Positions 10,696 to 64,000 of a stretch of DNA of 64,000 bases are shown one piece after another (within the stretch, counting starts at the first letter, position 1; each line of letters begins with the position of its first letter). The DNA is from Octopus sinensis (lineage: Eukaryota): NCBI RefSeq assembly GCF_006345805.1, contig NC_043012.1, positions 4,402,001 through 4,466,000 on the forward strand, read 5' to 3'. A model generated the notes under the pieces. The model was not told the DNA's origin, ran no database searches, and was given only the letters and a program-made list of their open reading frames with translations. Both the position numbers and the translations under genes were made by a program.

Positions 10696-11542
10696 TTTGA
10701 TACTTTGATACTTTGATAGGTTTCGGCCATTATTGGCCCAGGCCATGTCTAACTTAATAGCACCACCTGGTGAAGTCTTTCAAGTCAGAATTTGGGCACT
10801 ATGGCCCACTCAAGTAGAGAGTTATTGTTTACAGAGACATATCCGGGTGTAGGGGGGTTATCCGGGATTTCTTGAAGGAATCTGTCCAAAGACTTCTTGA
10901 ACCCTAGGGTCAGTTCTGTTTTAATGTGTTTTGGTGTAATGTTAAAGAGAGCGGGGCCCATTGAGGTGAAATAATTGTGCCGTATTGTTGTTATGAGATG
11001 AGAGTGCGATTTTTGTTTTGGGCGGATGGCACGGGGCCCAAGCCTTGGATGTACCTTAAAGGTGATGCCAACATCATTTGGGCAATGCTGATGGAATATT
11101 TTCCACATCATGCAGATGATGTAGCGCTCACGACGACGTTGGAGAGAATAGAGTTTTAGCTTTTCTAGTCGACCCCAATAGTCGAGGCCTGTCATGCCAT
11201 CTATCTTTTTTGTGATTGCCCTTTGAGGTGCTTCAACTTTTATGATACCTTGTATTGTGTGGGGAGACCACAGTGGACAACAGTATTCAAGGTGGGGTCG
11301 GGCAAAAGTGGAGAAGAGAAGGATAATGGTGTGGATATCTCTCGACTGGAAAGTTCTGAGAATCCAGGAACACTTCTGGCGGGCCATGTCAACTTTGGTG
11401 TTTATATGTGTGCCCAGCTTACGTTGTTGTCCACAATTACTCCCAAGTCTCTGATGTTGTTGGATGCCACGAGAGTTTCACCTGAAGGAAGGGAGTATGG
11501 GAGTTTCAGGGCATCCTCTTTTCCAAAGTGGATTAGCTCAAA
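10693..11542 (-). mobile_element. CR1-like LINE 3' fragment (5'-truncated)
   Basis: ORF 11387-10785 reads RPHLEYCCPLWSP...RLEKLKLYSLQRRRERY, the CR1/L2-type RT C-terminus. Octamer microsatellite tail at 10693-10718. Confidence 0.88.
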
Positions 11543-32290: not shown

Positions 32291-33128
32291 GGGTGTAACC
32301 AGCTCACTTATGAGTACCCCTAATTCATTGGACAATAAACTTTGCTTGCGTAGACCTATTGAGGCAAGTGAAATCAAATCAAAATCACTGACATGGCCGA
32401 GGACAGTACTGCCTGGTTGGCACTCATGCCAGTGGAACATTAAAAGCACATCCAAGCGTGGGGTGTAACCAGCTCACTTATGAGTACCCCTAATTCATTG
32501 GACAATAAACTTTGCATGCAAAGACCTATTGAGGCAAGTGAAATCAAATCAAAATCACTGACATGGCCGAGACAGTACTGCCTGGTTGGCACTCATGCCA
32601 GTGGAACATTAAAAGCAACATCCAACGTGGGGTGAACCAGCTCACTTATGAGTACCCCTAATTCATTGGACAATAACTTTGCATGCAAAGACCTATTGAG
32701 GCAAGTGAAATCAAATCAAAATCACTGACGTGGCCGAGGACAGTACTGCCTGGTTGGCACTCATGCCAGTGGAACATTAAAAGCACATCCAAGCGTGGGG
32801 TGTAACCAGCTCACTTATGAGTACCCCTAATTCATTGGACAATAAACTTTGCATGCAAAGACCTATTGAGGCAAGTGAAATCAAATCAAAATCACTGACG
32901 TGGCCGAGGACAGTACTGCCTGGTTGGCACTCATGCCAGTGGAACATTAAAAGCACATCCAAGCGTGGGGTGTAACCAGCTCACTTATGAGTACCCCTAA
33001 TTCATTGGACAATAAACTTTGCATGCAAAGACCTATTGAGGCAAGTGAAATCAAATCAAAATCACTGACGTGGCCGAGGACAGTACTGCCTGGTGGAACT
33101 CATGCCAGTGGAACGTTAAAAGCACACC
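32291..33128. repeat. ~170-bp tandem array (about 4.9 units), SINE-derived
   Basis: Unit starts at about 32291, 32461, 32630, 32798 and 32968. The last unit runs into a family-C SINE body. Confidence 0.92.
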
Positions 33129-33849
33129 CGAGTGTGATTGTTACCAGGGCCACGGATTGGCTCCTGTGCTGGTGGCACATAAAAAAGCACCATTTGAGTG
33201 TGATTGTCGCCAGCATCGCCTTACCAGCACATGTGCCAGTGGCACGTGAAAAACAAAATTCGGGTGTGGTCGTTGCCAGTGTCACCAAACTGGCTCCTGT
33301 GCAGGTAGTATGTAAAAAATATCTTTTGAACATGGTCATTGCCAGAACTGCCCGACAGGCCTTTGTGCTGGTGGCATGAAAAAGCACCCACTACACTCTT
33401 GGAGTGGTTGGTGTTAGGAAGGGCATCCAGCTGTAGAAATTTTTCCAGATCAGATTGAGCCTGGTGCAGCCTTCTGGCTCACCAATCCTCAGTCAAACCG
33501 TCCAACCCATGCCAACATGGAAAGCGGGCATTAAATGACAATGATGATGATGATGATGACATACACCCACACATATATATGCATACATATATACACATGC
33601 ATATATACAAACATACATGCATACATCCATCTATCCATCCATCCAGCCAGCCAGCCCTCCATACATGCATGCATGCATGCATACATACATACATACATAC
33701 ATACATACATACATGCATACATATATGCATATATACATACATACGTACATACATGCATACATACATACATACATACATACATACATACATACATACATAC
33801 ATACATACATACATGCATACATACATACATACATACATGCATGCATGCA

Positions 33850-37315: not shown

Positions 37316-37415
37316 NNNNNNNNNNNNNNNNNNNNNNNNNNNNNNNNNNNNNNNNNNNNNNNNNNNNNNNNNNNNNNNNNNNNNNNNNNNNNNNNNNNNN
37401 NNNNNNNNNNNNNNN
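37316..37415. other. Assembly gap (100 N)
   Basis: Run of exactly 100 N, likely a fixed-size scaffold gap. Confidence 0.99.
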
Positions 37416-41214: not shown

Positions 41215-43658
41215 GATTAGTTACAGGACTCATTAGAATCTTGGCAGGACTGGCTGACTTGCTCATTGTGTTAGTTGGTCATCTTCTAGGTTTATCTTGG
41301 CTGTTTATAAGTGTTTAAAATTTTACCTGAGGATGGTGGATTTCTGAAATGATGTAATCCAAGAATGTATCAATAAAATGCAAGTGAAACAGTTGTAGTA
41401 AATTTTAAACTCCATTTGTGTTCTTTGATATATATATATATATATAGGTGTGTGTGTGTGTGTGTGTGGGTGTGCCTGCGTACGTATGTGCTGTGTGCCT
41501 TTGTGTCTGTTCTGTGTTTGTCACCCACCACCGTTTGACAACTGCCGCAGTCTAAGGCATGAAACAAGTAAAAGATATCAGCGTGCAGCAAGATCCAGTA
41601 GTGAAACAGAAATAGTGGTACTAATGCCTGACTGAATTATCTCCCTTTCACCTCAATCATTATTTTGTATGAAACCAATGTTATTAGTAGAAGTATAGTG
41701 GTCGATATAAACAGCTTCCTCATCATCATCCTCGTTGTTTAACGTCCACTTTCCATGCTGGCATGGGTTGGACGGTTTGACGGAAGACTGGCAAGCCAGG
41801 CGGCTGCACCAGGCACTATTTGGATCTGGCAAAATTTTTACAGCTGGATGCCCTTCCTAATGCCAACCACTCAGAGAGTGTAGTGGGTGCATTTTACGTG
41901 CCACCAGCACAGGGGTCAGTATGGTGACACTGGCATCGACCATGCTCAAATGGTGCTTTTTACATGCCTCCGGCATGGGAGCCAGTCGGGGGGCACTGAT
42001 GCAGTACCAGGCAGTGGCTTTCATGGCATCTCATCTGAACTGATTGGAAGTGTCATCATGTACATTGTTTTGACCTGTTATCAAAGAGGGGTTGCAGTAA
42101 ATTTTCTGTTCAACACCATGGATTTACTTGTCAATTGTTTGAACTTAACTTTATTGGTTAATATTAGCTAACTGTTGGTTAACTTAACTACAACCATACA
42201 GACATGTGATTTAGATGATTGGATAGCAACCTCATGTTTCTGTGGCCCCGTGAACAAGTGTCTTTTACTGTAGCCTTGTGAATGGAATTTGGGTAATGGA
42301 AATTATATGGAGGTCATTATTATGCATGTGTGTATGTGTGTGTAGGTATGTGTGCACAGATGTATATGTGTGTTTGTGAGTGTGTGTGTGTTCACTGGCT
42401 TTGGTCTGGAGGAATGAGTTGTGGCCATGACTTTCACAGACCCTCCAAGACTGGTGAAACTGACACAGAACTGGTGAGTGGAAGTGAGTCCCTTCCAGAT
42501 GTGGTGGGTGTGCACAGCACATCCATTGAAAATGGCAAATTCATTATAAATATTAATCTTACTCATTAATTTAATCTCAAATCATAATGGAAAACGTTTG
42601 TTATACCTCTGCTTGAAATTTGATGGCAGGTGTCCTGAAATAACACTGCATACCTCACAGTGCTTTGTATCATAATATGGTACCACTGAGGTCAACTTTG
42701 CCTTTCATCTTTTTGGGGTTGATAGGATAATTACCAGTTATGTACTGAGGTCGATGTATTCTACTGGCCCCCTCCCCAACAATTTCAGGTCTTGTGCCTA
42801 TGGTAGAAAGGATTATTGATATGATCTAGCTTAACATATTCACTATTTGTCCTTGAATTTGGGCCATATATGCTTGAGTATGGCAAAAAATTAATGGTGA
42901 AGGATGTACGACAGCTTTGACAGTGCGGTTGCACATTCGTTTTCGTGACAAGAGGTTGCATGTTTAAATTAATTTAAAATTTCTTAACTAAAACTAATGT
43001 TAGTCATAGCATGGTCTGTGTGACAACAACCATCCCATACACCACTGGTCCCTTCATGTTAAAAAGCAACAAATAAAGATTAATAAAGGATGTATCAGAC
43101 TGAAAAAAGTACTTGAGGTTGATCTGATTAACTAAAACCCTCAAAAGTGGGACCCCCAGCATGCATGTAGTCTAAAGACTGAAACTGGCTGAAGACTAAT
43201 TGGTTAACGTAAACAACTGGTTAATATAAACATTTGGTTAACATCAGCAGTCAATTACCATGAACAGTTGGTTAACAAGTAAGTTAACATAAATAATTGG
43301 TTAACGACAACAATCAGATAACATAAATAATTAGTTAACATCAATAATTAGCTAACATAAATAGTGAACATGTTAAGCTAGATCATATCAATAATCCTTT
43401 CTACCATAGGCACAAGGTCTGAAATTGTGGGGGAGGGGGCCAGTAGAATACATCGACCTCAGTACATAACTGGTAATTATCTTATCAACCCCAAAAAGAT
43501 GAAAGGCAAAGTTGACCCCAGTGGAATTTGAACTCAAAATGTGAAGACATGAAATATCACTAAACATTTCACCCGGCATGCTAACAATTCTGCCAGAACA
43601 TTCGTTTAATGACAATTACATGAGGAAATCAATTTTATCATAAAAATTTCCAACATAC

Positions 43659-44258
43659 CTTTAAAACTTGGCAAAAAGCTATCAATTCCATAGAGATATA
43701 TTGCCAATATTCACGGCAGAAGTGAACTCGTTTTAGCATAATCTCTTTCGTTTTTACACAAACTGCCATAAAGTCACACCATTGCATTCGACAGATTGCC
43801 ATTTGTCCTTGAATTTGGGCCATATATGCTCGAGGGATGCCATGGATGAGATTATCTCCAGAGTAAAGTTTATAGATGGGGGCTTTGAATTCAGCAAGTC
43901 CAATAGTCCAGTTCAGCCCACTTCCTTCACAAACCAAAGCATCAGGGGAAGCTCCAACATAACCAGCTAACAAGTCACTCTCTTGTGGAACCCAAAATCC
44001 AGTTTCATTTGTTTTACAGCCAGTTAAGAGTTCGTAAGCTTCTCCAATGATTTTTTCCATTTTAATTCCATGACTCATATTTCGTGTTTGTTCATTTTCT
44101 TCTTGGTAATGCTCACTGTCTACTATTAGGGAGACAAAAAAATCGTAGGGCTTGCCTCTGCCTAGACCAAGTGCTTCACCAAATTTAGAAGCTGTCAGGG
44201 TTACTTTTTTCCGAGCTTCAAACCATTCTGGAGTTCTTTGCTTCACTTTAACTTCCAT
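43659..44258 (-). CDS. YqaJ-like / lambda-exonuclease family (PD-(D/E)xK) nuclease, main exon
   Basis: MEVKVKQRTPEWFEARK..LTASKFG..HGIKMEK..GASPDAL..LAEFKAP..YMAQIQGQM..WCDF gives the full YqaJ motif set. Acceptor TACAG at 44297-44298 (exon starts 44296), donor AAG|GTATGT at 43658. The ATG at 44258 is an inferred start. Confidence 0.88.
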
Positions 44259-44574
44259 CCTGGTTATTATGAATGGTATGCTTCCTAACACTGGAGCTGT
44301 AAAAGAAAAAAAAACAACAAAAATTAATATGCTTGCCTCAGCATGGCATGTCTGCAATCTAATGACTGAAACAAGTAAAAAATAAAAGATATAAGCATAG
44401 GAGTGGCAGTGTGGTAAGTAGCTTGCTTATGAACCACATGGTTCTGGGTTCAGTCCTACTGTGTGGCACCTTGGGCAAGTGTCTTCCACTATAGCCTCGG
44501 GCTGACCAAAGCCTTGTGAGTGGATTTGTTAGACAGAAACTGAAAGAAGCCCGTTGTATATATGTGTATATATG

Positions 44575-53999: not shown

Positions 54000-55022
54000 A
54001 ATGTCGGTGCCCCAGTATGGCCACAGCTCATTAGCTGAAACTGGAAAATCAAAAAAATAAAAAAATATATATAATCATCGTTTAACAGCCGTATTTCATG
54101 CCGGCATGAATTCAGCCATTGAAGTATTGATATTACATTTATTCTTTCATTACGATCGTTTCAACAACATATGCTTCAGACACATTATGAATATGAATAA
54201 TGATTATGTAATATTACAACATATATGTGACTTATGAGTTTTGTATGATAAAGTGACCATATAACACCTATGATATGCTGAAATATTACATAATCATTTT
54301 TCCTGTTCATGATATTGTTTCAACCGTGTATTAATGAAACGATCGTAAAGAGGGAGTAAATGTAAAACTAACATCTCCATTTTGTCCAATGCTTTAAGGA
54401 GTCTGTCAATGAATGATAAAACACAACACAAAAATACTAAGAAAAATAAACAACAAACAATATCCCTTATTTTTTAAGGATTTTCCTGTTTTTATTTGAA
54501 ATGTTTAGATAAACATCAGATTGCATTTTTTTTATTAGTGTTCCTTTTAAGAAATTTAAGTCTTTCATAAAAAAAAAAATGTTAATTCTTTTATAACTTC
54601 GGATGTTTCTCGATGATTGTCTGACACAACTTTCATTACAATTCCATGCAATTCTTCTTTCAGAACAAAACCTCATCTTCTATTTGGTCATGGTCATGGT
54701 CGTAGTAGTAGTTGTCCATTTGGTCGTCGTCGTAGTAGTAGTAGTAATAGTAGTAGTGGTGGTAATTGAGGTGTGGTGATAATTTCTTGCAATTCCTTTG
54801 ATTTAGAAGAGGATAAAACATAGAAAGTATAAGGCTGACATCCTCGTGTATTTCTTTGAATCCTGATTGGCTGGAACAGAGAATAAATCTGCTGTTGTAA
54901 TAAAATACAAGATGCAATTAAAAAAAATAATATTTTGAACATATGAATAGTCTTAGAACTTAATACAGATAATTCTCTCCCCGCCCCTCTCTTTCTCCAT
55001 ATACACATACATAAACGCATAC

Positions 55023-55087
<65 letters not shown>

Positions 55088-55116
55088 CATGTATATATAT
55101 GTATGTATATATATTT

Positions 55117-55565
55117 AATTAGTCAATTTAGGGTAGCAAAAAAATTCAATAGAAATCTATCGCTACCAGCGGCCTGGTGGAAAAGAGAAAATAGTCATCG
55201 ACTAAATATATAAATATAACAATTTAGGAGTGACCCTAACAGGTCATTCGTCCACCAGAAAGAGCAGCCATAACTCACACCGCCAAGTAGTAGTAATTCA
55301 GAAATTAGGTGAAAATTTAAAAACATTTACCCTAATTCATCTTTTAGACGTTGCAACGTTTCTGTGTCATTAATGATTAAATTAGCTTAATTAAATTAAA
55401 TTAAGCCAATCTACCATAGGTTACACTTCATCAGTAAAAAACCTGGGAGAGACAAATATACACGAGGCGTCTGTATCGATGCCTACGGAATATCTGTCTT
55501 AAAATTTTCAAGACTGACGTATTCGCGCCAAACTTATCAGCAGTAAATATAAACTGCCGATTCAA
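55117..55565 (-). repeat. Inverted, near-complete copy of the 472-bp unit
   Basis: Reverse complement of roughly 55729-56172. Confidence 0.95.
55340..55441 (-). ncRNA. Type I hammerhead ribozyme motif (copy C, inverted unit)
   Basis: Reverse complement of copy A: TCATCAG at 55428-55434, TTTC at 55359-55362, GAC at 55347-55349. Confidence 0.77.
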
Positions 55566-55849
55566 GGACGAATGACCTGTTAGGGTCACTCCTAAATTGT
55601 TATATTTATATATTTAGTCGATGACTATTTTCTCTTTTCCACCAGGCCGCTGGTAGCGATAGATTCTATGAATTTTTTTGCTACCCTAAATTGACTAATT
55701 GATAATTTTCTGAATAATTCTGAGATTGAATCGGCAGTTTATATTTACTGCTGATAAGTTTGGCGCGAATACGTCAGTCTTGAAAATTTTAAGACAGATA
55801 TTCCGTAGGCATCGATACAGACGCCTCGTGTATATTTGTCTCTCCCAGG

Positions 55850-55951
55850 TTTTTTACTGATGAAGTGTAACCTATGGTAGATTGGCTTAATTTAATTTAA
55901 TTAAGCTAATTTAATCATTAATGACACAGAAACGTTGCAACGTCTAAAAGA
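55850..55951 (+). ncRNA. Type I hammerhead ribozyme motif (copy A)
   Basis: UUUUUUA-CUGAUGA(55857-55863)-A-GUGU...ACAC-A-GAAA(55929-55932)-CGUUGCAAC-GUC(55942-55944)-UAAAAGA. Stem I, an extended stem II and a palindromic stem III all pair by eye. The 10.1-11.1 pair is A.A rather than G-C. Confidence 0.78.
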
Positions 55952-56321
55952 TGAATTAGGGTAAATGTTTTTAAATTTTCACCTAATTTCTGAATTACTA
56001 CTACTTGGCGGTGTGAGTTATGGCTGCTCTTTCTGGTGGACGAATGACCTGTTAGGGTCACTCCTAAATTGTTATATTTATATATTTAGTCGATGACTAT
56101 TTTCTCTTTTCCACCAGGCCGCTGGTAGCGATAGATTTCTATTGAATTTTTTTGCTACCCTAAATTGACTAATTGATAATTTTCTGAATATTCTGAGATT
56201 GAATCGGCAGTTTATATTTACTGCTGATAAGTTTGGCGCGAATACGTCAGTCTTGAAAATTTTAAGACAGATATTCCGTAGGCATCGATACAGACGCCTC
56301 GTGTATATTTGTCTCTCCAGG

Positions 56322-56422
56322 TTTTTTACTGATGAGTGTAACCTATGGTAGATTGGCTTAATTTAATTTAATTAAGCTAATTTAATCATTAATGACACAG
56401 AAACGTTGCAACGTCTAAAAGA
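56322..56422 (+). ncRNA. Type I hammerhead ribozyme motif (copy B)
   Basis: Same motif one unit downstream: CUGAUGA at 56329-56335, GAAA at 56400-56403, GUC at 56413-56415. One A is missing after CUGAUGA. Confidence 0.75.
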
Positions 56423-56814
56423 TGAATTAGGGTAAATGTTTTTAAATTTTCACCTAATTTCTGAATTACTACTACTTGGCGGTGTGAGTTATGGCTGCTC
56501 TTTCTGGTGGACGAATGACCTGTTAGGGTCACTCCTAAATTGTTATATGTATGTATATATATATATATATATATAATATTGTATATATATATATATGTAT
56601 ATGTATATATATATGTGTATATATAATATTTATATATGTATATATATATATAATATATGATATATATAACATATATATATATGTATATAATATATATAAT
56701 ATATGATATATATTTATATATATGTATATAATATATATAATATATGATATATATATATAATATATATATATATATTTATACATACATACATACATACATA
56801 CATACATACATACA

Positions 56815-56850
<36 letters not shown>

Positions 56851-57047
56851 CAACCAAGTGAACTACGTTGCGTAGAAACAATTGTAGAGATTACAAATAA
56901 ATGTTCCTTTGTACTCTTTCTTGTTGACTCCAGCTTATTCAATTATCCATTCACACACTACAGAAACTCCAACGCAAATCTGGCAATACGCCTGGGAACA
57001 GGGTAAGTCGATTATATCGACCCCAGTCAGTGTTCAACTGATACCTA

Positions 57048-57555
57048 CTGACCCATATTGGAATACGGGATTCAAGCCTCTTCTCCTTATCTCCTCAAAG
57101 ACATACAGCATCTCGAAAGAGTCTAGAAGCTGGCTACCCGCATGGTTCATGGTCTCAAAAATTTGTCCTATGAAGAAAGGCTGAGGACGCTCGACCTTTA
57201 TTCTCTAGAAAAACGCCGCCGCCGTGGTGATCTCATTCTCGCCCACAGCATCATAAGCGGAAAGTGTAACCTCTTGAAAGAGCTGTTCTTCACTCCTGCT
57301 CCAGAGCGTCGGCTGCGGGGTCATTCCGAAAAGCTATACCTGCGACGATTTCATCTCAATCGAAGGAGAGGAGCTTTCTCCGTCCGGGTTGCGGATCCGT
57401 GGAACAAGCTGCCAGACGAGATGGTGAAGATGCCGACGACCGCTTTGTTCAAAGCCTCCCTTGACCTCAAGTGGCCGAACTCTTTACATGAACACCACCC
57501 TGTACTTAACTCCATGTCCCCCTACATGGCCTTGCTATTTGCTTTTGAGCCAAAT

Positions 57556-57591
<36 letters not shown>
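57048..57591 (+). mobile_element. CR1-like LINE 3' fragment
   Basis: PILEYG...[41 protein letters not shown]...LRGH...FSVRVADPWNKLP, followed by an (AACT)n tail. Confidence 0.9.
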
Positions 57592-57854
57592 ACTGGGTGA
57601 AATCTGAAAGTGGACGTGTTTTGCACTGTACTCTACTACGTACTTAACAGAATATAATCTAACTACACATACACACACACACATAAACATATATACACAC
57701 ACACACATACACATACTTAAATAGCCAGTACAATCAGACTCTAATAAAAATGATAGTCACTTTATGAGAAACCATCTGTTATTCTGTTGGAAAAGGAAAT
57801 CTAAGACAGAAAGATATATGATACATGCATTGATGTTTACATGTAGACCATACA

Positions 57855-57907
<53 letters not shown>

Positions 57908-57970
57908 ATAACATACAACATATCTATATATCTATACTGTAATTATATGAAATTGTTACCACAGAAGATT

Positions 57971-58220
57971 TCAATTATTCCTCCTGATAGCTCTTATTCG
58001 GAATGGTTTTGGTTTATGTAGTAGAAGGTATTCTAATTCACCCTCCATGTGAAACGGCATTTTATTGTCTGCTGGTCGAATATTCATGCGATGTAGGATA
58101 TGTGTGAAATAGAGAAAGAGATTAAGAGTTGCCAGTGATTCTCCGGGGCATTCTCGAACACCAATGCCGAATGGTAAGAAGCAGTCTGGAATGGATATGG
58201 TTTTCTCATCTTTCAGGAAT
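57971..58220 (-). CDS. Cytochrome P450, last exon (haem-binding)
   Basis: FLKDEKTISIPDCFLPFGIGVRECPGESLATLNLFLYFTHILHRMNIRP...IRRNN*, containing FxxGxRxCxG. Acceptor TTCAG at 58221-58222, TGA at 57973-57971. Not in the supplied ORF track. Confidence 0.95.
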
Positions 58221-58605
58221 CTGAAAATATACGTTATGACTATATTTAAAAAGATAAATGCATTAATTTAAAAAAGAAAACACTAAAATTTCGAAGGGTT
58301 TTTCAGACGAATGGAAGGGTGGTGGGTAGAAACAAGGATTATGGGTAATTGAAGAAGGAATCAGACCAGAGACTTGATTCAAATGCTTGCAGCAGAATGG
58401 AGTTTGCTAAAGGTAACCAAGAGCCAGGTAATGGTGTTAAACCACATGACAGATTAATGCTATTAGTTAAATAATTACTACAGTCATGGAGTGAGAAAAA
58501 TGGAATAAATTTCTTCATAACTCGAGGACTTTGTTGGATGAAAAAAAGATTGCAAGAAAATACGAGTAATATTGTCGAGGTTCATAAAGAAGCTAGAAGA
58601 GCATT

Positions 58606-59121
58606 ATGGGAACATACACCATGAACAATGGTTGCCCACCGATGGATTCTGAGGCTGCGGCTGGGAAGGAGGGACTCCCGGATAAGTTGGAGGAACCCCA
58701 TCCTCCCGTCGAGAAGAGAAAAAAAAGAAGAAGAGAAAAAAATGGGACATTACTGGCAGTTGACGATCAACTGCCAGCATGCTCCGAAACTCTGTCGGTG
58801 GGAAGTGTACCACCGACAGAGGGAGCAGTGGCCCCTCCCAGAAGGAGGATAGATAAGTTTGTCATACTCTTTCGGAAGGGAGGGGCGATAGAAAGCTTCC
58901 TAAGGAAGCGAGAAGGTTGGACGGAGGAGCCCTTAGCCTGGACTGAAAACCCGAATTGTCCTTCGCAGGTGACTGCGAAGGTCATATCGGAGGTTAACAT
59001 GTCCAGGGTGTTGGGCTTCTTTACGAAGGACTTGTTTATAGTCGATTTTTGGGACCCCGACCGGGATCCGGAGCAGTACCTATGGGCAGCTCACAGCCTG
59101 GTCGGGGGCGAAGAAGAATAG
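58606..59121 (+). mobile_element. Orphan 171-aa ORF within a LINE-like element (possible ORF1 C-terminus)
   Basis: GC-rich open frame with a basic cluster (KRKKRRR), followed by a UTR-like tail ending in AATAAA at 59368. No RT is encoded. Confidence 0.45.
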
Positions 59122-59520
59122 GCTTAGCACCGAAATATGTAAACTTATATTTGTAGATTAATATTGTTGTGATTTTTGTAAGAGATTCACTGCCTCATGT
59201 AATGATTTGTTAAAGAACAATGTTATAGAGAAGCAGAGGGTCGGCGGGCGCTTTCTGTCTTCTCCCATCCTTATCATTCTCGTATCATTATCATTCATTT
59301 CATTAATGTCTTGTTCAGCCCGCAAAGCTACCTAATCGATGTACTGTCTAGATGACAAATATAATGAAATAAAGTAGCTTGCTTGCCAACCACATGGTTC
59401 CGGGTTCAGTCCCACTGCGTGGCACCTTGGGCAAGTGTCTTCTACTATAGTCTCGGGCCGACCAAAACCTTGTTAGTGGATTTGGTAGACGGAAACTAAA
59501 AGAAGCCCGTCGTATATATG

Positions 59521-59551
<31 letters not shown>

Positions 59552-59781
59552 GTTTATGTGTCTCTGCTTGTCCCTCCAACATCGTTTGACAACCGATGCT
59601 AGTGTGTCTACGTCCCCGTAACGTAGCAGTTCGGCAAAAGAGACCGATAGAATAAGTACTAGGCTTACAAAGAATAAGTCCTGGGGTCGATTTGCTCGAG
59701 TAAAGGCGGTGCTCCAGCATGGCCGTAATCAGATGACTGAAACAAGTAAAAGAATAAAAAGAATATAGAATTGAGTTATAC

Positions 59782-59881
59782 CTTGTTGGGTCGAATTTTT
59801 TGGGGTTTTTCCAGTATCTTGTATCATAGTGAAGACTCCAAACATTGCAGAGGATCCAGGTGTCTTTGGGAATATCATAAC
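59782..59881 (-). CDS. Cytochrome P450, penultimate exon
   Basis: (G)YDIPKDTWILCNVWSLHYDTRYWKNPKKFDPT(R), giving a PERF-like FDPTRF. 100 nt, phase 1 to 2. Confidence 0.95.
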
Positions 59882-60800
59882 CTATTGAAAGGGATTTGTA
59901 ATCATATAAAGATATATGAATTGTGATATCCTTATAAGGAAACATCATTGTAAATTTATTACATGATAAAATTAAGTCAGACCATCTACGTCTATTTTGG
60001 TCTCAAATTTATATTGGTCTCAAATTAAGTCAGACCGTCTGTGTCTATATTGGTCTCAAATTTTGGCATAAGGCCAGCAATTTAGGGGAATGGGGTAAGT
60101 CGATTATATCGACCCCAGTCAGTGTTCAACTGATACCTAATTTATTAACCCCGAAAGGATGAAAGGCTAAGTCAACTTCGGCAGAATTTGAACTCAGAAC
60201 GTAAAGACGGACGAAATGCCGCTGAAAAATTTCGCTCGGCGTACGAACGATTGTGCCAGTTCGCCACCTTATCGTGTGTCTATAGTGTTAAGAAATATAT
60301 GAATACTTCTCATTTGAGAGCGGGATACTAGAGAGGAACCTCAGAAGCTGAGTAAAATAATATCTCTTATGGCTTCAAAAGAAATGAATATAAGCGAGTC
60401 ATGCAAGTATTTCATTCCTAACTTTATATCTTAAGGGGCTCTTGCCACGAAATAGTGCTATTTTTAATTGAAATATAGACAAGCTTTGAGTAAAGATCAA
60501 ATCCTTTACTGAAATGGTGAGGATAATGGTGATAATAACAATAACAATAAAAACAACATCGATAATAATGAATTGACCGCTAAAAAAGTGTTTGACAGTT
60601 TTTTTCCATAGCTGGCTTGAGAAATGCTTGGAAATACACAAATCTTTCCAGTTATTGGTAATGTTCTGTCAATAGCACAAAGCACTGGGAAACAACTCTG
60701 ATATTGAATTCAAAGGCAGGCACTATGAATGCTGTTGACAGTCAAGTACTGGGGTGGATGCATTTGACTTGCTCTCCAACACCCCTCAAAATTGCTGGCC

Positions 60801-60855
<55 letters not shown>

Positions 60856-60887
60856 CATCATCATCATCATCATCATCATCATTATAA

Positions 60888-60934
<47 letters not shown>

Positions 60935-60937
<3 letters not shown>

Positions 60938-61228
60938 TAGTTTTATTTTTATAGCGTGCTTTCACTTCACTACCGAGCGCAGCTCTGTGTGCCTTGGGTA
61001 TGTGCTGTGATTTGTTGTGATGCTCTGATGGTTATTGTATGGAAAGTGTTCTGCGTAGGATGTGTGCAGTGCCTAGTAGTGCAATTTTCTGTATGTTATA
61101 TGTGTTTGTAAGTCCTGGTGTTTTTGTTATGAATATTTTTTGTCTGAATATTTTTTTATCATGCCTAATGCACCTACTATGATAGGAATTGTTTCTGTTT
61201 TTAGATTCCACATTCTGGTTACCTCTAT
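60935..61228 (-). mobile_element. Second R4/Dong-like 3' end, in (TAA)n
   Basis: Near-identical to 27464-27760. Encodes ...IQKIALLGTAHILRRTLSIQ*. (TAT)n on both sides. Confidence 0.82.
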
Positions 61229-61234
61229 CGATTA

Positions 61235-61267
<33 letters not shown>

Positions 61268-61500
61268 GGTGGCGAGCTGGTAGAATCGTTAGCACCCCGG
61301 AAGAAATACTTAGCTGTATTTCGCCTGTTGCTACGTCCTGAGTTCAAATTCCTCCGTGGTCGACTTTGCCTTTATCCTTTCGGGGTTCGATAAATTAAGT
61401 ACCAGTTACACACTGGGGTCGTTGTAATCGACTAGTCCCGTCCCCCAAAATTTCAGGCCCTGTGCCTATAGTAGAAAGGATCATCATCACCATTATTATT

Positions 61501-61535
<35 letters not shown>

Positions 61536-61543
61536 TATCTTAC

Positions 61544-62338
61544 CTTGCAATACTGTATTTTTAACTGCTTGATGTGGGTAGAGAAATGGCATTACTGAGG
61601 CCATTCTGTGAGCTTCACATATGGTAGCAAGTGTATAAGGCAACTTAGGCTGCTCGGCAAGACTTGGGTTGTTTTCTCTTCCAACGACTTTATCTAATTC
61701 CTCCTGCACTTGTGACTGTATACTGGGGTACATTGCCATGTACCCAAGAAGCCATGTCAAACAAACAGCAGTCGATTCAAACCCACTGCCTGAAATCTCC
61801 AGTAGAATATTCTCCATGTCAGAACTAGCAAACAAACCTTTGTCATCACCGTTTTCGACATAGACAAGTAGCTGGTCAGTCAAATCCCTCAGAACACAAG
61901 GATTAAAAGTATCTTTGTGGAAGTTGATGAGTTTCCTTTGGTATTCGTGCTGGAGACGCATTCTCTCTTTGATTTGCTTGAAGCGTAAGTTTTCCAAGAA
62001 AGATGGCAAAGGGAAAATATCGGGAAATGTCTGTTTCAGACATTTTGCTCGAAGAGTGAGCGACTTGAGAATCTCTTGGAAATTGGTGTCTTTCTCATCG
62101 TTGCGGTGCCACTGGCTGAATATTATGGACAGGGTAACATTTAGAAATGAAGGATAAAGAAGATTGAAAGGATTAAAGGGAGCCTTTTCTCTTATGAATT
62201 TCTGTAAGACATCCTGAACTTCACTGCCAATCTTCATCTCCGTATCATATTCCAGACAATATGTGCCATCGACCATACAGTCTTGCAAGAAATCACGCTT
62301 TTGTTCCAGTTTATCATCATAATCAGCCGTTATGAAAC
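61544..62338 (-). CDS. Cytochrome P450 (clan 2, CYP1/CYP17-like), large internal exon; upstream exons outside window
   Basis: I-helix EISGSGFESTAVCLTW, K-helix EAHR, PFLYPHQA. Acceptor TTAG at 62339-62340, donor G|GTAAG at 61543. 795 nt, phase 1 to 1. Confidence 0.93.
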
Positions 62339-62367
62339 CTAAACAAGAAAAACAAAAATTATTTATA

Positions 62368-62412
<45 letters not shown>

Positions 62413-63162
62413 AAGAAATAACAGAATCGTTAGCATGCTGGGCGAAATGCTTAGCGGAATTTCGTCCGTCGCCACATTCTGAGTTCAAATTCCGCCGATG
62501 TTTGACTTTGCTTTTCATCCTTTCGGGGCCAATAAATTAAGTGCCAGTGAAGTTGTTTGTTCCTTCTCGAGCCACGCCTAGCTCACAAGGGCTGGTTTCC
62601 CAGTTTCCTTGGCGTTTAGGTTCCCCACCTGGACGGGACGCCGGTCCGTTGCAGATGAGCTGCAAGATGCAGGAGGAAAGAGTGAGAGAATGTTGTGGCG
62701 AAAGAGTCAGCAGAAGTTCGCCATTACCTTCTGCCGGAGCCGCGTGGAGCTTAGGTGTTTCGTTCATAAACACACACATCGCCCGGTCTGAGATTTGAAC
62801 CCGCGATCCCTCGACCGCGAGTCCGCTGCTCTAACCACTAGGCCATGTGCCTCCACTCCAGTCAAGTACTTCCCTCAAATTTTAGGCTTTGTGCCTAAAA
62901 TAGAAAGGATTCTTCTTCTTCTTCTTCTTCTTCTTCTTCTTCTTCTCTTCTTCTTCTTCTTCTTCTTCTTCTTCTTCTTTTTTCTCTTCTTCTATTCTCT
63001 TTCTTTTCTTCTTCTCTTCTTCTTCTTCTTCTTCTTCTTCTTAAGGTAGCCTGCTGGTACAATTGTTAGCATACCAGACAAAATGCTTAGTGGGATTTTG
63101 TCTGTCTTTACATTCTGGGTTCAAGTTTCACCAATGTCAGCTTTGCCTTTCATCCTTTTGAG

Positions 63163-64000
63163 GTGGCCAATGTGTTTATCGTATCGGTCATCATCTATCG
63201 CCTAACCATAATTCCTTGTCTGGATTCGTGGTTGAGCAAGTTGGAAAGACAGATCTTCCGCTTCTTGTGGAAGGGCTCGACTCCACTTGTGAGACGTTCT
63301 ATTTGCTGTCAAAAACCATTAAAGGGTGGATTAGGGATGCCTTGGCTGTTGATGTGCAAATATGCGCTGAGGTTGAAGCATCTTTGGATCCTCCTGGATG
63401 GCGAACGGATGTGGTCTTCGTTGGCGAAACGCATGTTTCTCAGGTTCACTAGTTTCGGTGGATGGGAAAACTGGTTTCATCGAAGATCAAAGTTGGGTAC
63501 TTGGTACACGGAGTGTCGTAAGGCTCTCCCGCTTTTCCGTCGCTCGCGGTTTTGGTACATCTTTTTATAGTCGGTTGGTAGATTCTAGATGTGACGATAC
63601 CCTAAGGGAGATCCTGGGTCTCGACGATAATCAACTGGACAGTCTGTTCCAACGGAAATTCGGGCCGAAGACACTGGATAACTTCAAAAAGTCTCTGGCT
63701 TGGTAATGTTACCGAGGAGCCTTACCCGTTCGGGATAAGCTTACTAGACACGGTTATCCCGGTCCATCGGCCTTTCCAAGATGCGAGCAGGAGAGGGAAA
63801 CCGTCCTGTATGCTATTGTCCAGTGTCCGGATGTGTCAGAATTGTGGGCTTATGTAGAACACCTGTTGTCCGATACAAGAAGAGTACAGCCGTCGTTTGA
63901 GTCAATTCTAAAAATTGACCCACCTGCTTTCCTAACGAAAGAAGGCAAGAATTGTTTCTCGTGGTAGTAGCAATTGCGAGAGAGGTGATATGGAAGTCGC
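63163..64000 (+). mobile_element. L1/Tx1-clade LINE ORF2 C-terminal fragment (degenerate)
   Basis: FRFLWKG...GGLGMP, then SLAW*CYRGALPVRDKL...RCEQERETVLYAIVQCP, a zf-RVT-like region. Stops are present. Confidence 0.85.

What the first reader, a model, noticed from the sequence alone, without database searches (positions are those of the whole stretch)
55117..56547. 472-bp tandem repeat carrying a type I hammerhead ribozyme in every unit: candidate cephalopod retrozyme / circRNA element
Seen: each unit contains CUGAUGA...GAAAC...GUC with stem I (UUUUUUA/UAAAAGA), stem II (GUGU/ACAC, extended by a 12-bp hairpin AUUGGCUUAAUU/AAUUAAGCUAAU) and a palindromic stem III (ACGUUGCAACGU). The two + strand cleavage sites (after 55944 and 56415) are 471 nt apart and flank exactly one monomer. 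The unit has no coding capacity. Established: tandem repeats with type I hammerheads and palindromic stem III occur in newt satellite 2, schistosome Sm-alpha and cricket satellites, and in metazoan non-LTR retrozymes, which are processed to monomers and circular RNAs and are thought to be mobilised by Penelope-like elements. Inference: this is such a family, transcribed, self-cleaved and circularised. Caveat: the 10.1-11.1 position is A.A (G.A in copy B) rather than the canonical G-C, which may lower activity or require a dimeric fold.
Basis: partly seen in the sequence, partly recalled or inferred. Interest (0 to 1): 0.92.

Follow-up and report, generated by a model that had tools for sequence, protein, structure and literature searches.

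The report
Hammerhead-bearing retroelement insertion in octopus
A 1.4-kb insertion in an intron of an octopus cytochrome P450 gene consists of three copies of a 471-base non-coding unit, each with a slightly off-consensus hammerhead ribozyme motif; it looks like a cephalopod example of the known "retrozyme" class of parasitic elements, but its activity is untested.

Summary
The sequence features are real but the anatomy needs correcting. Only 55566-56547 is a tandem repeat (period 471, 2.1 copies). 55117-55565 is an inverted copy, 100% complementary to 55726-56174. All three copies carry a type I hammerhead-like motif, with C17 at 55944(+), 56415(+) and 55347(-). The full invariant core, an 8-bp helix I, a 4-bp helix II extended by a long hairpin, and a 12-nt palindromic helix III are all present.

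My relaxed descriptor finds only these three motifs in the window (0.01 expected per random 64 kb). A canonical descriptor finds none. No Rfam hammerhead model matches, even at E<=10 on 131 nt. The base of helix II is non-canonical.

The inverted copy abutting a partial tandem, inside a (TA)n-type microsatellite, matches the published insertion signature of Penelope-like elements. The host is an octopod. The insertion sits in a GT-AG intron in the 3'UTR of a P450 gene.

Best reading: a young insertion of a non-autonomous, Penelope-dependent, hammerhead-bearing element (a non-LTR retrozyme). Cleavage, circular RNA, copy number and covariation could not be tested. No relative was found in any reachable collection. 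It is a new member of a known kind, of moderate interest.

The parts
55096..55114 (.). Left flank: TATATGTATGTATATATAT, a possible target-site duplication (left copy) within an (AGAT)n/(TA,TG)n microsatellite
   Evidence: The same 19-mer lies at 56544-56562. It also occurs at 44569 and 49414, so the evidence is weak.
55117..55565 (-). Inverted copy C of the unit (449 nt), identical to the reverse complement of 55726-56174. It abuts the direct array head to head at 55565/55566.
   Evidence: I1, 100% complementary; exact identity
55339..55442 (-). Hammerhead-like motif C: C3 at 55434, G12 at 55362, C17 at 55347. It is sense to the host P450 pre-mRNA.
55566..56037 (+). Direct unit 1 (472 nt)
55849..55952 (+). 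Hammerhead-like motif A. Helix I is 55849-55856 paired with 55945-55952. The core CUGAUGA is at 55857-55863, followed by an extra A at 55864. Helix II is GUGU (55865-55868) paired with ACAC (55924-55927). There is an extra A at 55928 and GAAA at 55929-55932. The helix III palindrome is 55932-55943. The predicted cut is after C55944.
   Evidence: hammerhead fold -27.6 kcal/mol against an MFE of -29.2 kcal/mol
56038..56508 (+). Direct unit 2 (471 nt). It differs from unit 1 only by five 1-nt homopolymer indels.
56321..56423 (+). Hammerhead-like motif B. The core is at 56329-56335, with no extra A after A9. G12 is at 56400. The predicted cut is after C56415.
56509..56547 (+). Partial third unit (about 39 nt, up to 51 nt if the TA-rich overlap with the flank is counted). 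This is the 3' end of the insertion.
56544..56562 (.). Right flank copy of the 19-mer (possible target-site duplication), followed by a (TA)n-rich microsatellite running to 56850
54871..57959 (-). Host context: a GT..AG intron in the 3'UTR of a cytochrome P450 gene. It contains the whole insertion.
   Evidence: Spliced alignment of octopus transcript L001 to the window, with donor G|GTAAC and acceptor TTCCAG|

Best explanation
This is a recent insertion of a short (471 nt), non-coding, AT-rich retroelement that carries a type I hammerhead motif. It is a non-LTR 'retrozyme', meaning a non-autonomous dependant of Penelope-like elements (PLEs).

Shown here:
- The motif.
- The unit and its copies.
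- The inverted-plus-tandem architecture.
- The microsatellite target.
- The intronic position in an octopod P450 gene.

Inferred by analogy with described retrozymes:
- Family members are transcribed as multimers.
- Hammerheads of neighbouring units pair through the palindromic helix III to form a dimeric active fold. They cut after GUC and release 471-nt monomers with 5'-OH and 2',3'-cyclic phosphate ends.
- A host RtcB-type ligase circularises the monomers.
- A PLE reverse transcriptase/GIY-YIG endonuclease copies multimeric or circular RNA into a nicked (TA)n site.

For this insertion, the process gave more than two tandem units and a second, inverted cDNA joined head to head.

This locus itself is probably a poor source of circles, because the 449-bp inverted repeat would trap hammerheads A and C in a duplex. 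Its most likely present-day effect is a long dsRNA hairpin, plus one sense-strand hammerhead, inside the P450 pre-mRNA intron.
For: - Motif: all invariant core positions (C3-A9, G12-A14, A15.1-U16.1, C17) and three helices with helix I open. Only these three sites pass my descriptor in the window, against 0.01 expected per random 64 kb.
- Fold: the hammerhead fold is within 1.6 kcal/mol of the MFE. Helix III is -1.6 kcal/mol as a hairpin but -19.3 kcal/mol as a 12-bp intermolecular duplex. This fits the dimeric mode described for metazoan type I and PLE hammerheads (PMC4209133; PMC7229834).
- PLE-type traits: an extra base between A9 and G10.1 (copies A and C), a long helix II and a palindromic helix III.
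- Unit properties: 471 nt, 34% GC, 66% paired as a circle, z = -6 against shuffles. There is no ORF with homologues. These agree with published retrozyme properties: tandem repeats of 150-450 bp, GC below 45-50%, and highly self-paired RNA.
- Architecture: 2.1 tandem units with an inverted copy directly at their 5' end, inside a TA-rich microsatellite. This equals the PLE insertion signature (PMC8557442). Opposite-strand pairs of PLE hammerheads 100-700 bp apart are also reported.
- Age: there are no substitutions among the copies, so the insertion is young.
- Partner elements: Penelope families, including young ones, exist in Octopus vulgaris (PMC13282606).
Against: - No Rfam hammerhead model matches, even at E<=10 on a 131-nt query.
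- The most conserved pair after A15.1-U16.1, G10.1-C11.1, is not adjacent to the core. All copies have an extra A between C11.1 and G12, and I found no described natural precedent for that. Mismatches at this position lower activity (PMC3088659).
- The three copies are one event and show no informative variation, so there is no covariation evidence.
- No other copy was found in the window, among 5.8 billion predicted proteins using the unit's six-frame peptides as a proxy, or in the metagenome and viral collections. No eukaryotic genome collection was available, so 'family' is unproven.
- Against real 471-nt windows of the same region, the fold is only in the top ~4%, and the strand asymmetry is in the top ~14%.
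- At 471 nt, the unit is slightly above the published 150-450 bp range.
- In Xenopus, only 1 of 9 cloned retrozyme dimers cleaved in vitro.
Confidence: 0.6

Rival explanations
1. The locus is remnants of an autonomous Penelope-like element rather than a dedicated non-autonomous family. The 471-nt unit would be the hammerhead-bearing pseudo-LTR/3' region of a PLE, present here as heavily 5'-truncated copies in the usual tandem and inverted arrangement.
For: PLE insertions are often strongly 5'-truncated, tandem and inverted, with the hammerhead in the pLTR. A 2026 preprint finds retrozymes phylogenetically nested with PLE pLTRs. The hammerhead traits are PLE-like.
Against: The units continue head to tail without any break over 2.1 periods. 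That means the template itself had a 471-nt period. Two independent truncations at the same point are unlikely. No RT or GIY-YIG coding remnant adjoins the array; the neighbouring ORFs are LINE-like tails and P450 exons.
Confidence: 0.15
2. The locus is an ordinary local DNA rearrangement: tandem duplication plus fold-back inverted duplication at an unstable microsatellite. The sequence would contain a hammerhead-like motif by chance or as a decayed relic, with no RNA function and no mobility.
For: Only one locus is known. The motif is non-canonical and is not recognised by Rfam. The inverted copy reproduces one contiguous genomic stretch exactly, including both variant types, as a DNA-level copy would. 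The flanks are recombination-prone repeats. The structural excess is modest against real genomic background.
Against: A complete motif of this quality is expected 0.01 times per 64 kb. It coincides with a repeat of retrozyme-like size, GC content and self-pairing. There is no microhomology at the head-to-head junction. The arrangement matches a known retroelement signature.
Confidence: 0.15
3. The inverted copy, and perhaps the copy number, is an assembly artefact of a repeat embedded in microsatellites. The real locus would hold a simpler array.
For: Exact 449-nt identity contrasts with five indels between the direct units. All the differences are 1-nt homopolymer indels, which is a typical long-read error type. 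The PLE literature itself warns that such insertions cause assembly problems.
Against: The arms are offset by a 160-nt spacer rather than forming a simple read-through palindrome. The inverted copy has its own unique junction with the left flank. The nearest assembly gap is 18 kb away. This rival would not remove the hammerhead motif or the tandem period.
Confidence: 0.1

Closest known systems
Metazoan non-LTR retrozymes (Cervera & de la Pena 2020, PMC7229834: coral Acropora, mussel Mytilus, axolotl)
   Same: Short, non-coding, AT-rich tandem unit with one type I hammerhead per unit. Cleavage sites lie one unit apart. The predicted RNA is strongly self-paired. Helix III is weak or palindromic, which favours a dimeric ribozyme. 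Arrays are as short as dimers and trimers.
   Different: The unit is 471 nt, against 150-450 bp repeats and ~170-400 nt circles. Helix II carries a ~55-nt hairpin extension beyond a 4-bp stem and a 5x5 loop. There is a non-canonical A.A or bulged A next to the core. No expression, cleavage or copy-number data exist. An inverted copy is attached. The location is intronic, whereas vertebrate retrozymes are reported as depleted from introns.
Penelope-like element hammerheads and PLE insertion architecture (PMC4209133; PMC8557442)
   Same: An unpaired base between A9 and G10.1 (copies A and C), a longer helix II and a palindromic helix III. The insertion is a partial tandem with an inverted 5'-truncated copy at the 5' end. 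The target is a TA-rich microsatellite.
   Different: No RT/GIY-YIG ORF is present. Helix III is a full 4-bp stem with a tetraloop rather than 0-2 bp. Helix I is 8 bp rather than 4-5 bp. There is an additional A between C11.1 and G12.
Classical hammerhead satellites: newt satellite 2, Schistosoma Sm-alpha, Dolichopoda pDo500
   Same: Tandem DNA repeats of a few hundred bp that encode a type I hammerhead. Dimeric cleavage is described for the newt.
   Different: Those are high-copy arrays with canonical G10.1-C11.1 and short helix II loops, and they have demonstrated transcripts and cleavage. Here there are only 2.1 + 0.95 copies, and nothing is demonstrated.
Intronic hammerheads of amniotes (HH9/HH10 in RECK and C10orf118 introns)
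   Same: One copy (C) lies in the sense strand of a host-gene intron and could cut the pre-mRNA.
   Different: Those are single, ultraconserved and canonical motifs. This one is a young repeat-borne copy with no conservation evidence, and it does not match Rfam HH9/HH10.

Membership tests
Hammerhead ribozyme, type I | Invariant core: C3 U4 G5 A6 N7 G8 A9, G12 A13 A14, the A15.1-U16.1 pair, and H17 (not G) at the cleavage site | tested here: met
   CUGAUGA ... GAAA C ... GU C is present in all three copies.
Hammerhead ribozyme, type I | Three helices around the core, with helices II and III closed by loops and helix I open | tested here: met
   Helix I is 8 bp, helix II is 4 bp plus an extension, and helix III is 4 bp plus a UGCA loop.
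Hammerhead ribozyme, type I | G10.1-C11.1 pair stacked directly on A9 and G12 | tested here: not met
   Copies A and C read A9-A-GUGU...ACAC-A-G12. Copy B reads A9-GUGU...ACAC-A-G12. My canonical descriptor gives 0 hits. The 5' extra base has a PLE-hammerhead precedent. I found no precedent for the 3' extra A.
Hammerhead ribozyme, type I | Match to curated covariance models (Rfam Hammerhead_1, Hammerhead_3, Hammerhead_II, HH9, HH10) | tested here: not met
   There is no hammerhead hit at the gathering score, at E<=10 on 1.8 kb, or at E<=10 on 131 nt. The ~65-nt helix II and the core-junction irregularity probably explain this, but I could not test that.
Hammerhead ribozyme, type I | Helices supported by covariation among copies | tested here: inconclusive
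   The copies differ only by five 1-nt indels, and no relatives were retrievable.
Hammerhead ribozyme, type I | Mg2+-dependent self-cleavage 3' of H17 | not testable with these tools
   This needs in vitro transcription of monomer and dimer constructs.
Metazoan non-LTR retrozyme | Tandem repeat of roughly 150-450 bp with one type I hammerhead per unit, low GC, and no LTR/PBS/PPT or ORF | tested here: met
   Period 471 (slightly above the range), 2.1 copies, 34% GC, one motif per unit, and no ORF with homologues.
Metazoan non-LTR retrozyme | Multi-copy family dispersed in the genome | not testable with these tools
   There is no further copy in the 64-kb window, and no cephalopod genome collection was available.
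Metazoan non-LTR retrozyme | Expressed as unit-length linear and circular RNA | not testable with these tools
   No nucleotide-level transcriptome search was available. The peptide proxy against Logan-derived proteins found nothing, which is a weak negative.
Metazoan non-LTR retrozyme | Highly self-paired monomer RNA | tested here: met
   The circular MFE is -128.7 kcal/mol with 66% of bases paired, z = -6 against shuffles. It is only in the top ~4% against real windows.
Penelope-like-element-type insertion | Partial tandem with an inverted 5'-truncated copy immediately at the 5' end | tested here: met
   The inverted copy 55117-55565 abuts the sense-strand array that starts at 55566. The criterion comes from PMC8557442.
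Penelope-like-element-type insertion | Insertion into a microsatellite, often (TA)n | tested here: met
   (AGAT)16 and TA/TG repeats lie on the left, and a 300-bp TA-rich repeat lies on the right. A possible 15-19-bp duplication is not distinguishable from microsatellite periodicity.
Penelope-like-element-type insertion | Sequence relationship of the unit to a PLE pseudo-LTR in the same genome | not testable with these tools
   No PLE sequence is in the window, and the genome was not available.

The most novel reading that the evidence does not exclude
An atypical hammerhead is nevertheless active as a dimer and defines the first cephalopod retrozyme family. Its atypical features are a helix II extended to about 65 nt and a purine-purine layer between the core and the G10.1-C11.1 pair.

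This young insertion would also preserve the integration intermediate: two cDNAs from one heterogeneous multimeric RNA, joined head to head in a (TA)n site. That would be direct structural evidence that retrozymes are integrated by Penelope-type machinery, and from multimeric RNA rather than from monomeric circles.

As a side effect, the locus would place a 450-bp perfect dsRNA hairpin and a sense hammerhead inside a P450 pre-mRNA, in an animal group known for heavy RNA editing.
Probability: 0.2. Interest if true: 0.65.

Novelty: new member of a known kind. Interest (0 to 1): 0.45.

Why it matters
Retrozymes and Penelope-like elements are linked mostly by co-occurrence and, recently, by phylogeny in vertebrates. 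A young insertion still carries the full Penelope-type signature: an inverted copy, a partial tandem and a microsatellite target. Such an insertion would be a clean structural example of that link in a mollusc lineage where no hammerhead element is described in the searchable literature.

If the off-consensus hammerhead cleaves, it would widen the known tolerance of the core/helix II junction and of helix II length. If it does not cleave, the locus is simply one more dead copy of a known kind of repeat. In that case its main consequence is a long intronic inverted repeat in a P450 gene.

Tried and rejected
- Rfam at the gathering score on the whole window, and at E<=10 on 1.8 kb and on 131 nt, gave no hammerhead or any other ribozyme family. 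The MIR1435 hit (E=7e-6) is only the inverted repeat and was rejected.
- blastn of the unit against the window found no further copies.
- Exact-protein look-ups of two unit ORFs and the neighbouring LINE-tail ORF found nothing on record.
- A concatenate of all six-frame unit peptides against 5.8 billion proteins, used as a proxy for other genomic or transcript copies, gave nothing at E<=0.01.
- DNA pattern scans gave 0 hits: viral contigs and two metagenome scans. These collections are unlikely to hold cephalopod DNA, so the negatives are weak.
- A tRNA or SINE-head origin was rejected: ARAGORN finds no tRNA in 54500-57200.
- A second ribozyme of opposite polarity in the unit was not found.
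- A target-site duplication was not accepted as evidence. The 19-mer flanks the insertion but recurs twice elsewhere in the window.
- A fold-back priming origin for the inverted copy has no support from microhomology at the junction, but it is not excluded.
- Shuffle z-scores for the monomer fold (-6 to -7) were tempered by a control with real genomic windows, where the unit ranks in the top ~4%.
- I prepared a six-frame Pfam scan of the whole window for PLE remnants but did not run it. Nine selected ORFs gave only P450 and YqaJ.
Full report
OBSERVATION

The region was read directly. TRF reports a 471-nt period with 2.1 copies and 98% matches at 55566-56556. It is an inverted copy, 449 nt long and 100% complementary to 55726-56174 (pair I1; exact identity checked).

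The locus therefore has three parts:
- an inverted copy C (55117-55565, minus sense);
- a head-to-head junction at 55565/55566;
- unit 1 (55566-56037), unit 2 (56038-56508) and about 39 nt of a third unit.

Units 1 and 2 differ at only five positions. All five are 1-nt indels in 2-3-nt homopolymer runs, and there are no substitutions. Copy C reproduces one contiguous stretch across the unit 1/unit 2 boundary, including the variants of both units. There is no other copy of the unit in the 64-kb window.

THE HAMMERHEAD MOTIF

Each copy contains the motif in this order:
- 5' UUUUUUA (plus a G.U pair, giving an 8-bp helix I);
- CUGAUGA;
- helix II, which is GUGU/ACAC, then a 5x5 internal loop and a 19-bp AU-rich hairpin;
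- GAAA;
- helix III, ACGU-UGCA-ACGU;
- C17;
- the 3' strand of helix I.

All invariant core positions are present, helices II and III are closed, and helix I is open. That makes it type I.

I wrote a hammerhead descriptor and ran it on both strands of the window and on 300 random 64-kb sequences with the same dinucleotide statistics. If helix II must begin directly at 10.1/11.1, there are no hits anywhere. If a 1x1 mismatch or a 1-nt bulge is allowed there, the only hits in the window are the three array motifs, and random sequences give 0.01 per 64 kb. The motif is therefore not a chance match. It is, however, one event copied three times.

The hammerhead fold of 55841-55962 costs only 1.6 kcal/mol more than the MFE: -27.6 against -29.2 kcal/mol. 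RNAfold predicts helix II and its extension on its own.

WEAK POINTS OF THE MOTIF

No Rfam hammerhead family matches. This holds at the gathering score on the window, at E<=10 on 1.8 kb, and at E<=10 on a 131-nt query.

The base of helix II is off-consensus:
- Copies A and C read A9-A-GUGU ... ACAC-A-G12.
- Copy B lacks the 5' A.

An equally valid reading is a normal G10.1-C11.1 pair separated from the core by an extra base on each side.

The extra base between A9 and G10.1 is a conserved trait of Penelope-type hammerheads. So are a longer helix II and a palindromic helix III (PMC4209133). I found no precedent for the extra A between C11.1 and G12, which is present in all three copies.

Mismatches at 10.1-11.1 generally lower activity, and U.U is the best tolerated (PMC3088659). 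An axolotl retrozyme hammerhead with U.U at that position is weakly active as a monomer and better as a dimer (PMC7229834).

Helix III is marginal as a hairpin (-1.6 kcal/mol) but forms a 12-bp intermolecular duplex at -19.3 kcal/mol. A dimeric mode is therefore the natural prediction.

THE UNIT AS AN RNA

The monomer between the cleavage sites is 471 nt with 34% GC. As a circle it folds to -128.7 kcal/mol with 66% of bases paired, z about -6 against dinucleotide shuffles. The minus strand folds 27-28 kcal/mol worse.

Against real 471-nt windows from the same 64 kb, after GC correction, the plus strand ranks 7th of 160 and the strand asymmetry ranks 11th of 80. The RNA is structured, but not extraordinarily so for this genome.

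The ORFs are 43-52 aa. A concatenate of all six-frame peptides finds nothing among 5.8 billion proteins. No tRNA-like head is present.

SURROUNDINGS

The flanks are microsatellites: (AGAT)16 and TA/TG repeats on the left, and a 300-bp TA-rich repeat on the right. The 19-mer TATATGTATGTATATATAT flanks the insertion on both sides, at 55096 and 56544. It also occurs at 44569 and 49414, so I do not count it as a proven target-site duplication.

The window carries a cytochrome P450 gene on the minus strand (Pfam PF00067). Its large exon is 95% identical in protein to a Logan contig from run SRR3401912. One paper describes that run as an octopus metatranscriptome. The exon is 72% identical to transcripts from Sepia esculenta runs.

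Aligning the octopus transcript to the window gives:
- exons at 62340-61542, 59883-59780 and 58222-57960, with the stop codon at 57973-57971;
- a canonical GT..AG intron at 57959-54871;
- the rest of the 3'UTR at 54870 to about 54562.

The whole insertion lies inside this 3'UTR intron. Copy C's hammerhead is sense to the pre-mRNA, and hammerheads A and B are antisense.

WHAT IT IS

The arrangement is a partial tandem of the sense-strand element with an inverted, shorter copy immediately at its 5' end, sitting in a (TA)n-type microsatellite. This is the published signature of Penelope-like element insertions (PMC8557442). Pairs of Penelope-type hammerheads 100-700 bp apart on opposite strands are also reported.

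Non-LTR retrozymes are described as AT-rich tandem repeats of 150-450 bp, from dimers upward. They have one type I hammerhead per unit and are expressed as self-paired circles of about 170-400 nt. They are proposed, and in a 2026 preprint phylogenetically argued, to be non-autonomous derivatives of Penelope-like elements. Octopus vulgaris has Penelope families, including young ones.

My best reading, with confidence about 0.6, is a young insertion of such an element. The life cycle of multimeric transcript, dimeric self-cleavage, ligation by a host RtcB-type ligase, and reverse transcription and integration by a PLE is inference by analogy. None of it is shown here.

TWO FURTHER INFERENCES

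First, unit 1 differs from unit 2, yet copy C equals the contiguous unit 1/unit 2 stretch. Three origins fit this pattern: both cDNAs were copied from one heterogeneous multimeric RNA, copy C was copied from the first cDNA, or copy C is a later DNA-level duplication. Simple rolling-circle copying of a monomeric circle would give identical units. This cannot be resolved without reads (note 4).

Second, any transcript that spans 55117-56174 folds into a ~450-bp perfect duplex of about -840 kcal/mol on either strand. That duplex would bury hammerheads A and C. This locus is more plausibly a source of long dsRNA inside the P450 pre-mRNA than of circles.

RIVALS

- It is a truncated remnant of an autonomous PLE rather than a dedicated non-autonomous family (0.15). 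The seamless 471-nt periodicity and the lack of any RT/EN remnant argue against this.
- It is a purely DNA-level duplication or fold-back with a chance or relic motif (0.15). The 0.01 expectation and the retroelement-like architecture argue against this, but only one locus is known.
- The inverted copy is an assembly artefact (0.1, not exclusive of the others). The homopolymer-only differences and the exact identity hint at this. The 160-nt offset of the arms and the distinct left junction argue against it.

COMPARISON AND NOVELTY

Functionally and architecturally this is closest to metazoan non-LTR retrozymes and to Penelope-type hammerheads. It differs in unit length (471 nt), in the ~65-nt helix II, in the irregular core/helix II junction, and in its intronic location.

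Membership of the hammerhead class is not established by the strict tests: the curated models, the G10.1-C11.1 adjacency and cleavage. The invariant core and the three-helix topology are met. I found no paper in the searchable library that links hammerheads or retrozymes with cephalopods. The library is incomplete, however, and no cephalopod genome could be searched.

VERDICT

This is a new member of a known kind, if the family is confirmed. Interest is 0.45.

Noticed in passing
window 54562-62340 (minus strand): A cytochrome P450 gene with exons at 62340-61542, 59883-59780 and 58222-57960 (stop codon at 57973-57971). A canonical GT..AG intron (57959-54871) sits 11 nt after the stop codon, so it lies in the 3'UTR. 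This was inferred from a 90%-identical octopus transcript.
   Followed up: yes
window 55117-56174: A 449-bp perfect inverted repeat with a 160-nt spacer. Transcripts of either strand fold into a ~450-bp duplex of about -840 kcal/mol. It is a likely dsRNA, editing or siRNA substrate inside the P450 pre-mRNA. It also explains the spurious Rfam MIR1435 hit.
   Followed up: partly
window 55664-55863 vs 56136-56335: All five differences between the two direct units are 1-nt indels in 2-3-nt homopolymer runs, with no substitutions. This could be polymerase or RT slippage, or residual long-read error. One of them decides whether the hammerhead has the extra A after A9.
   Followed up: partly
window 32291-33136: A separate tandem repeat of about 169 bp with 5 units that are 94-97% alike. 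It is unrelated to the 471-nt unit and has no hammerhead motif.
   Followed up: partly
window 43638-44357 (minus strand): A 239-aa ORF with a YqaJ-like recombinase/exonuclease domain (PF09588, E=1.4e-18). It is probably part of a DNA transposon.
   Followed up: no
window 10785-11387(-), 57142-57558(+), 63091-63964(+): ORF fragments that look like the C-terminal tails of non-LTR (LINE) reverse transcriptases. They have no Pfam hit. One lies 600 bp to the right of the array in the same intron. None is Penelope-like.
   Followed up: partly
window 37316-37415: A run of 100 N, which is an assembly gap.
   Followed up: no
window 55117 and ~56547: Both 3' ends of the insertion lie 5-7 nt after a CCTAAATTG motif that occurs twice in the unit. 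It may be a priming or recognition site, or a coincidence.
   Followed up: no
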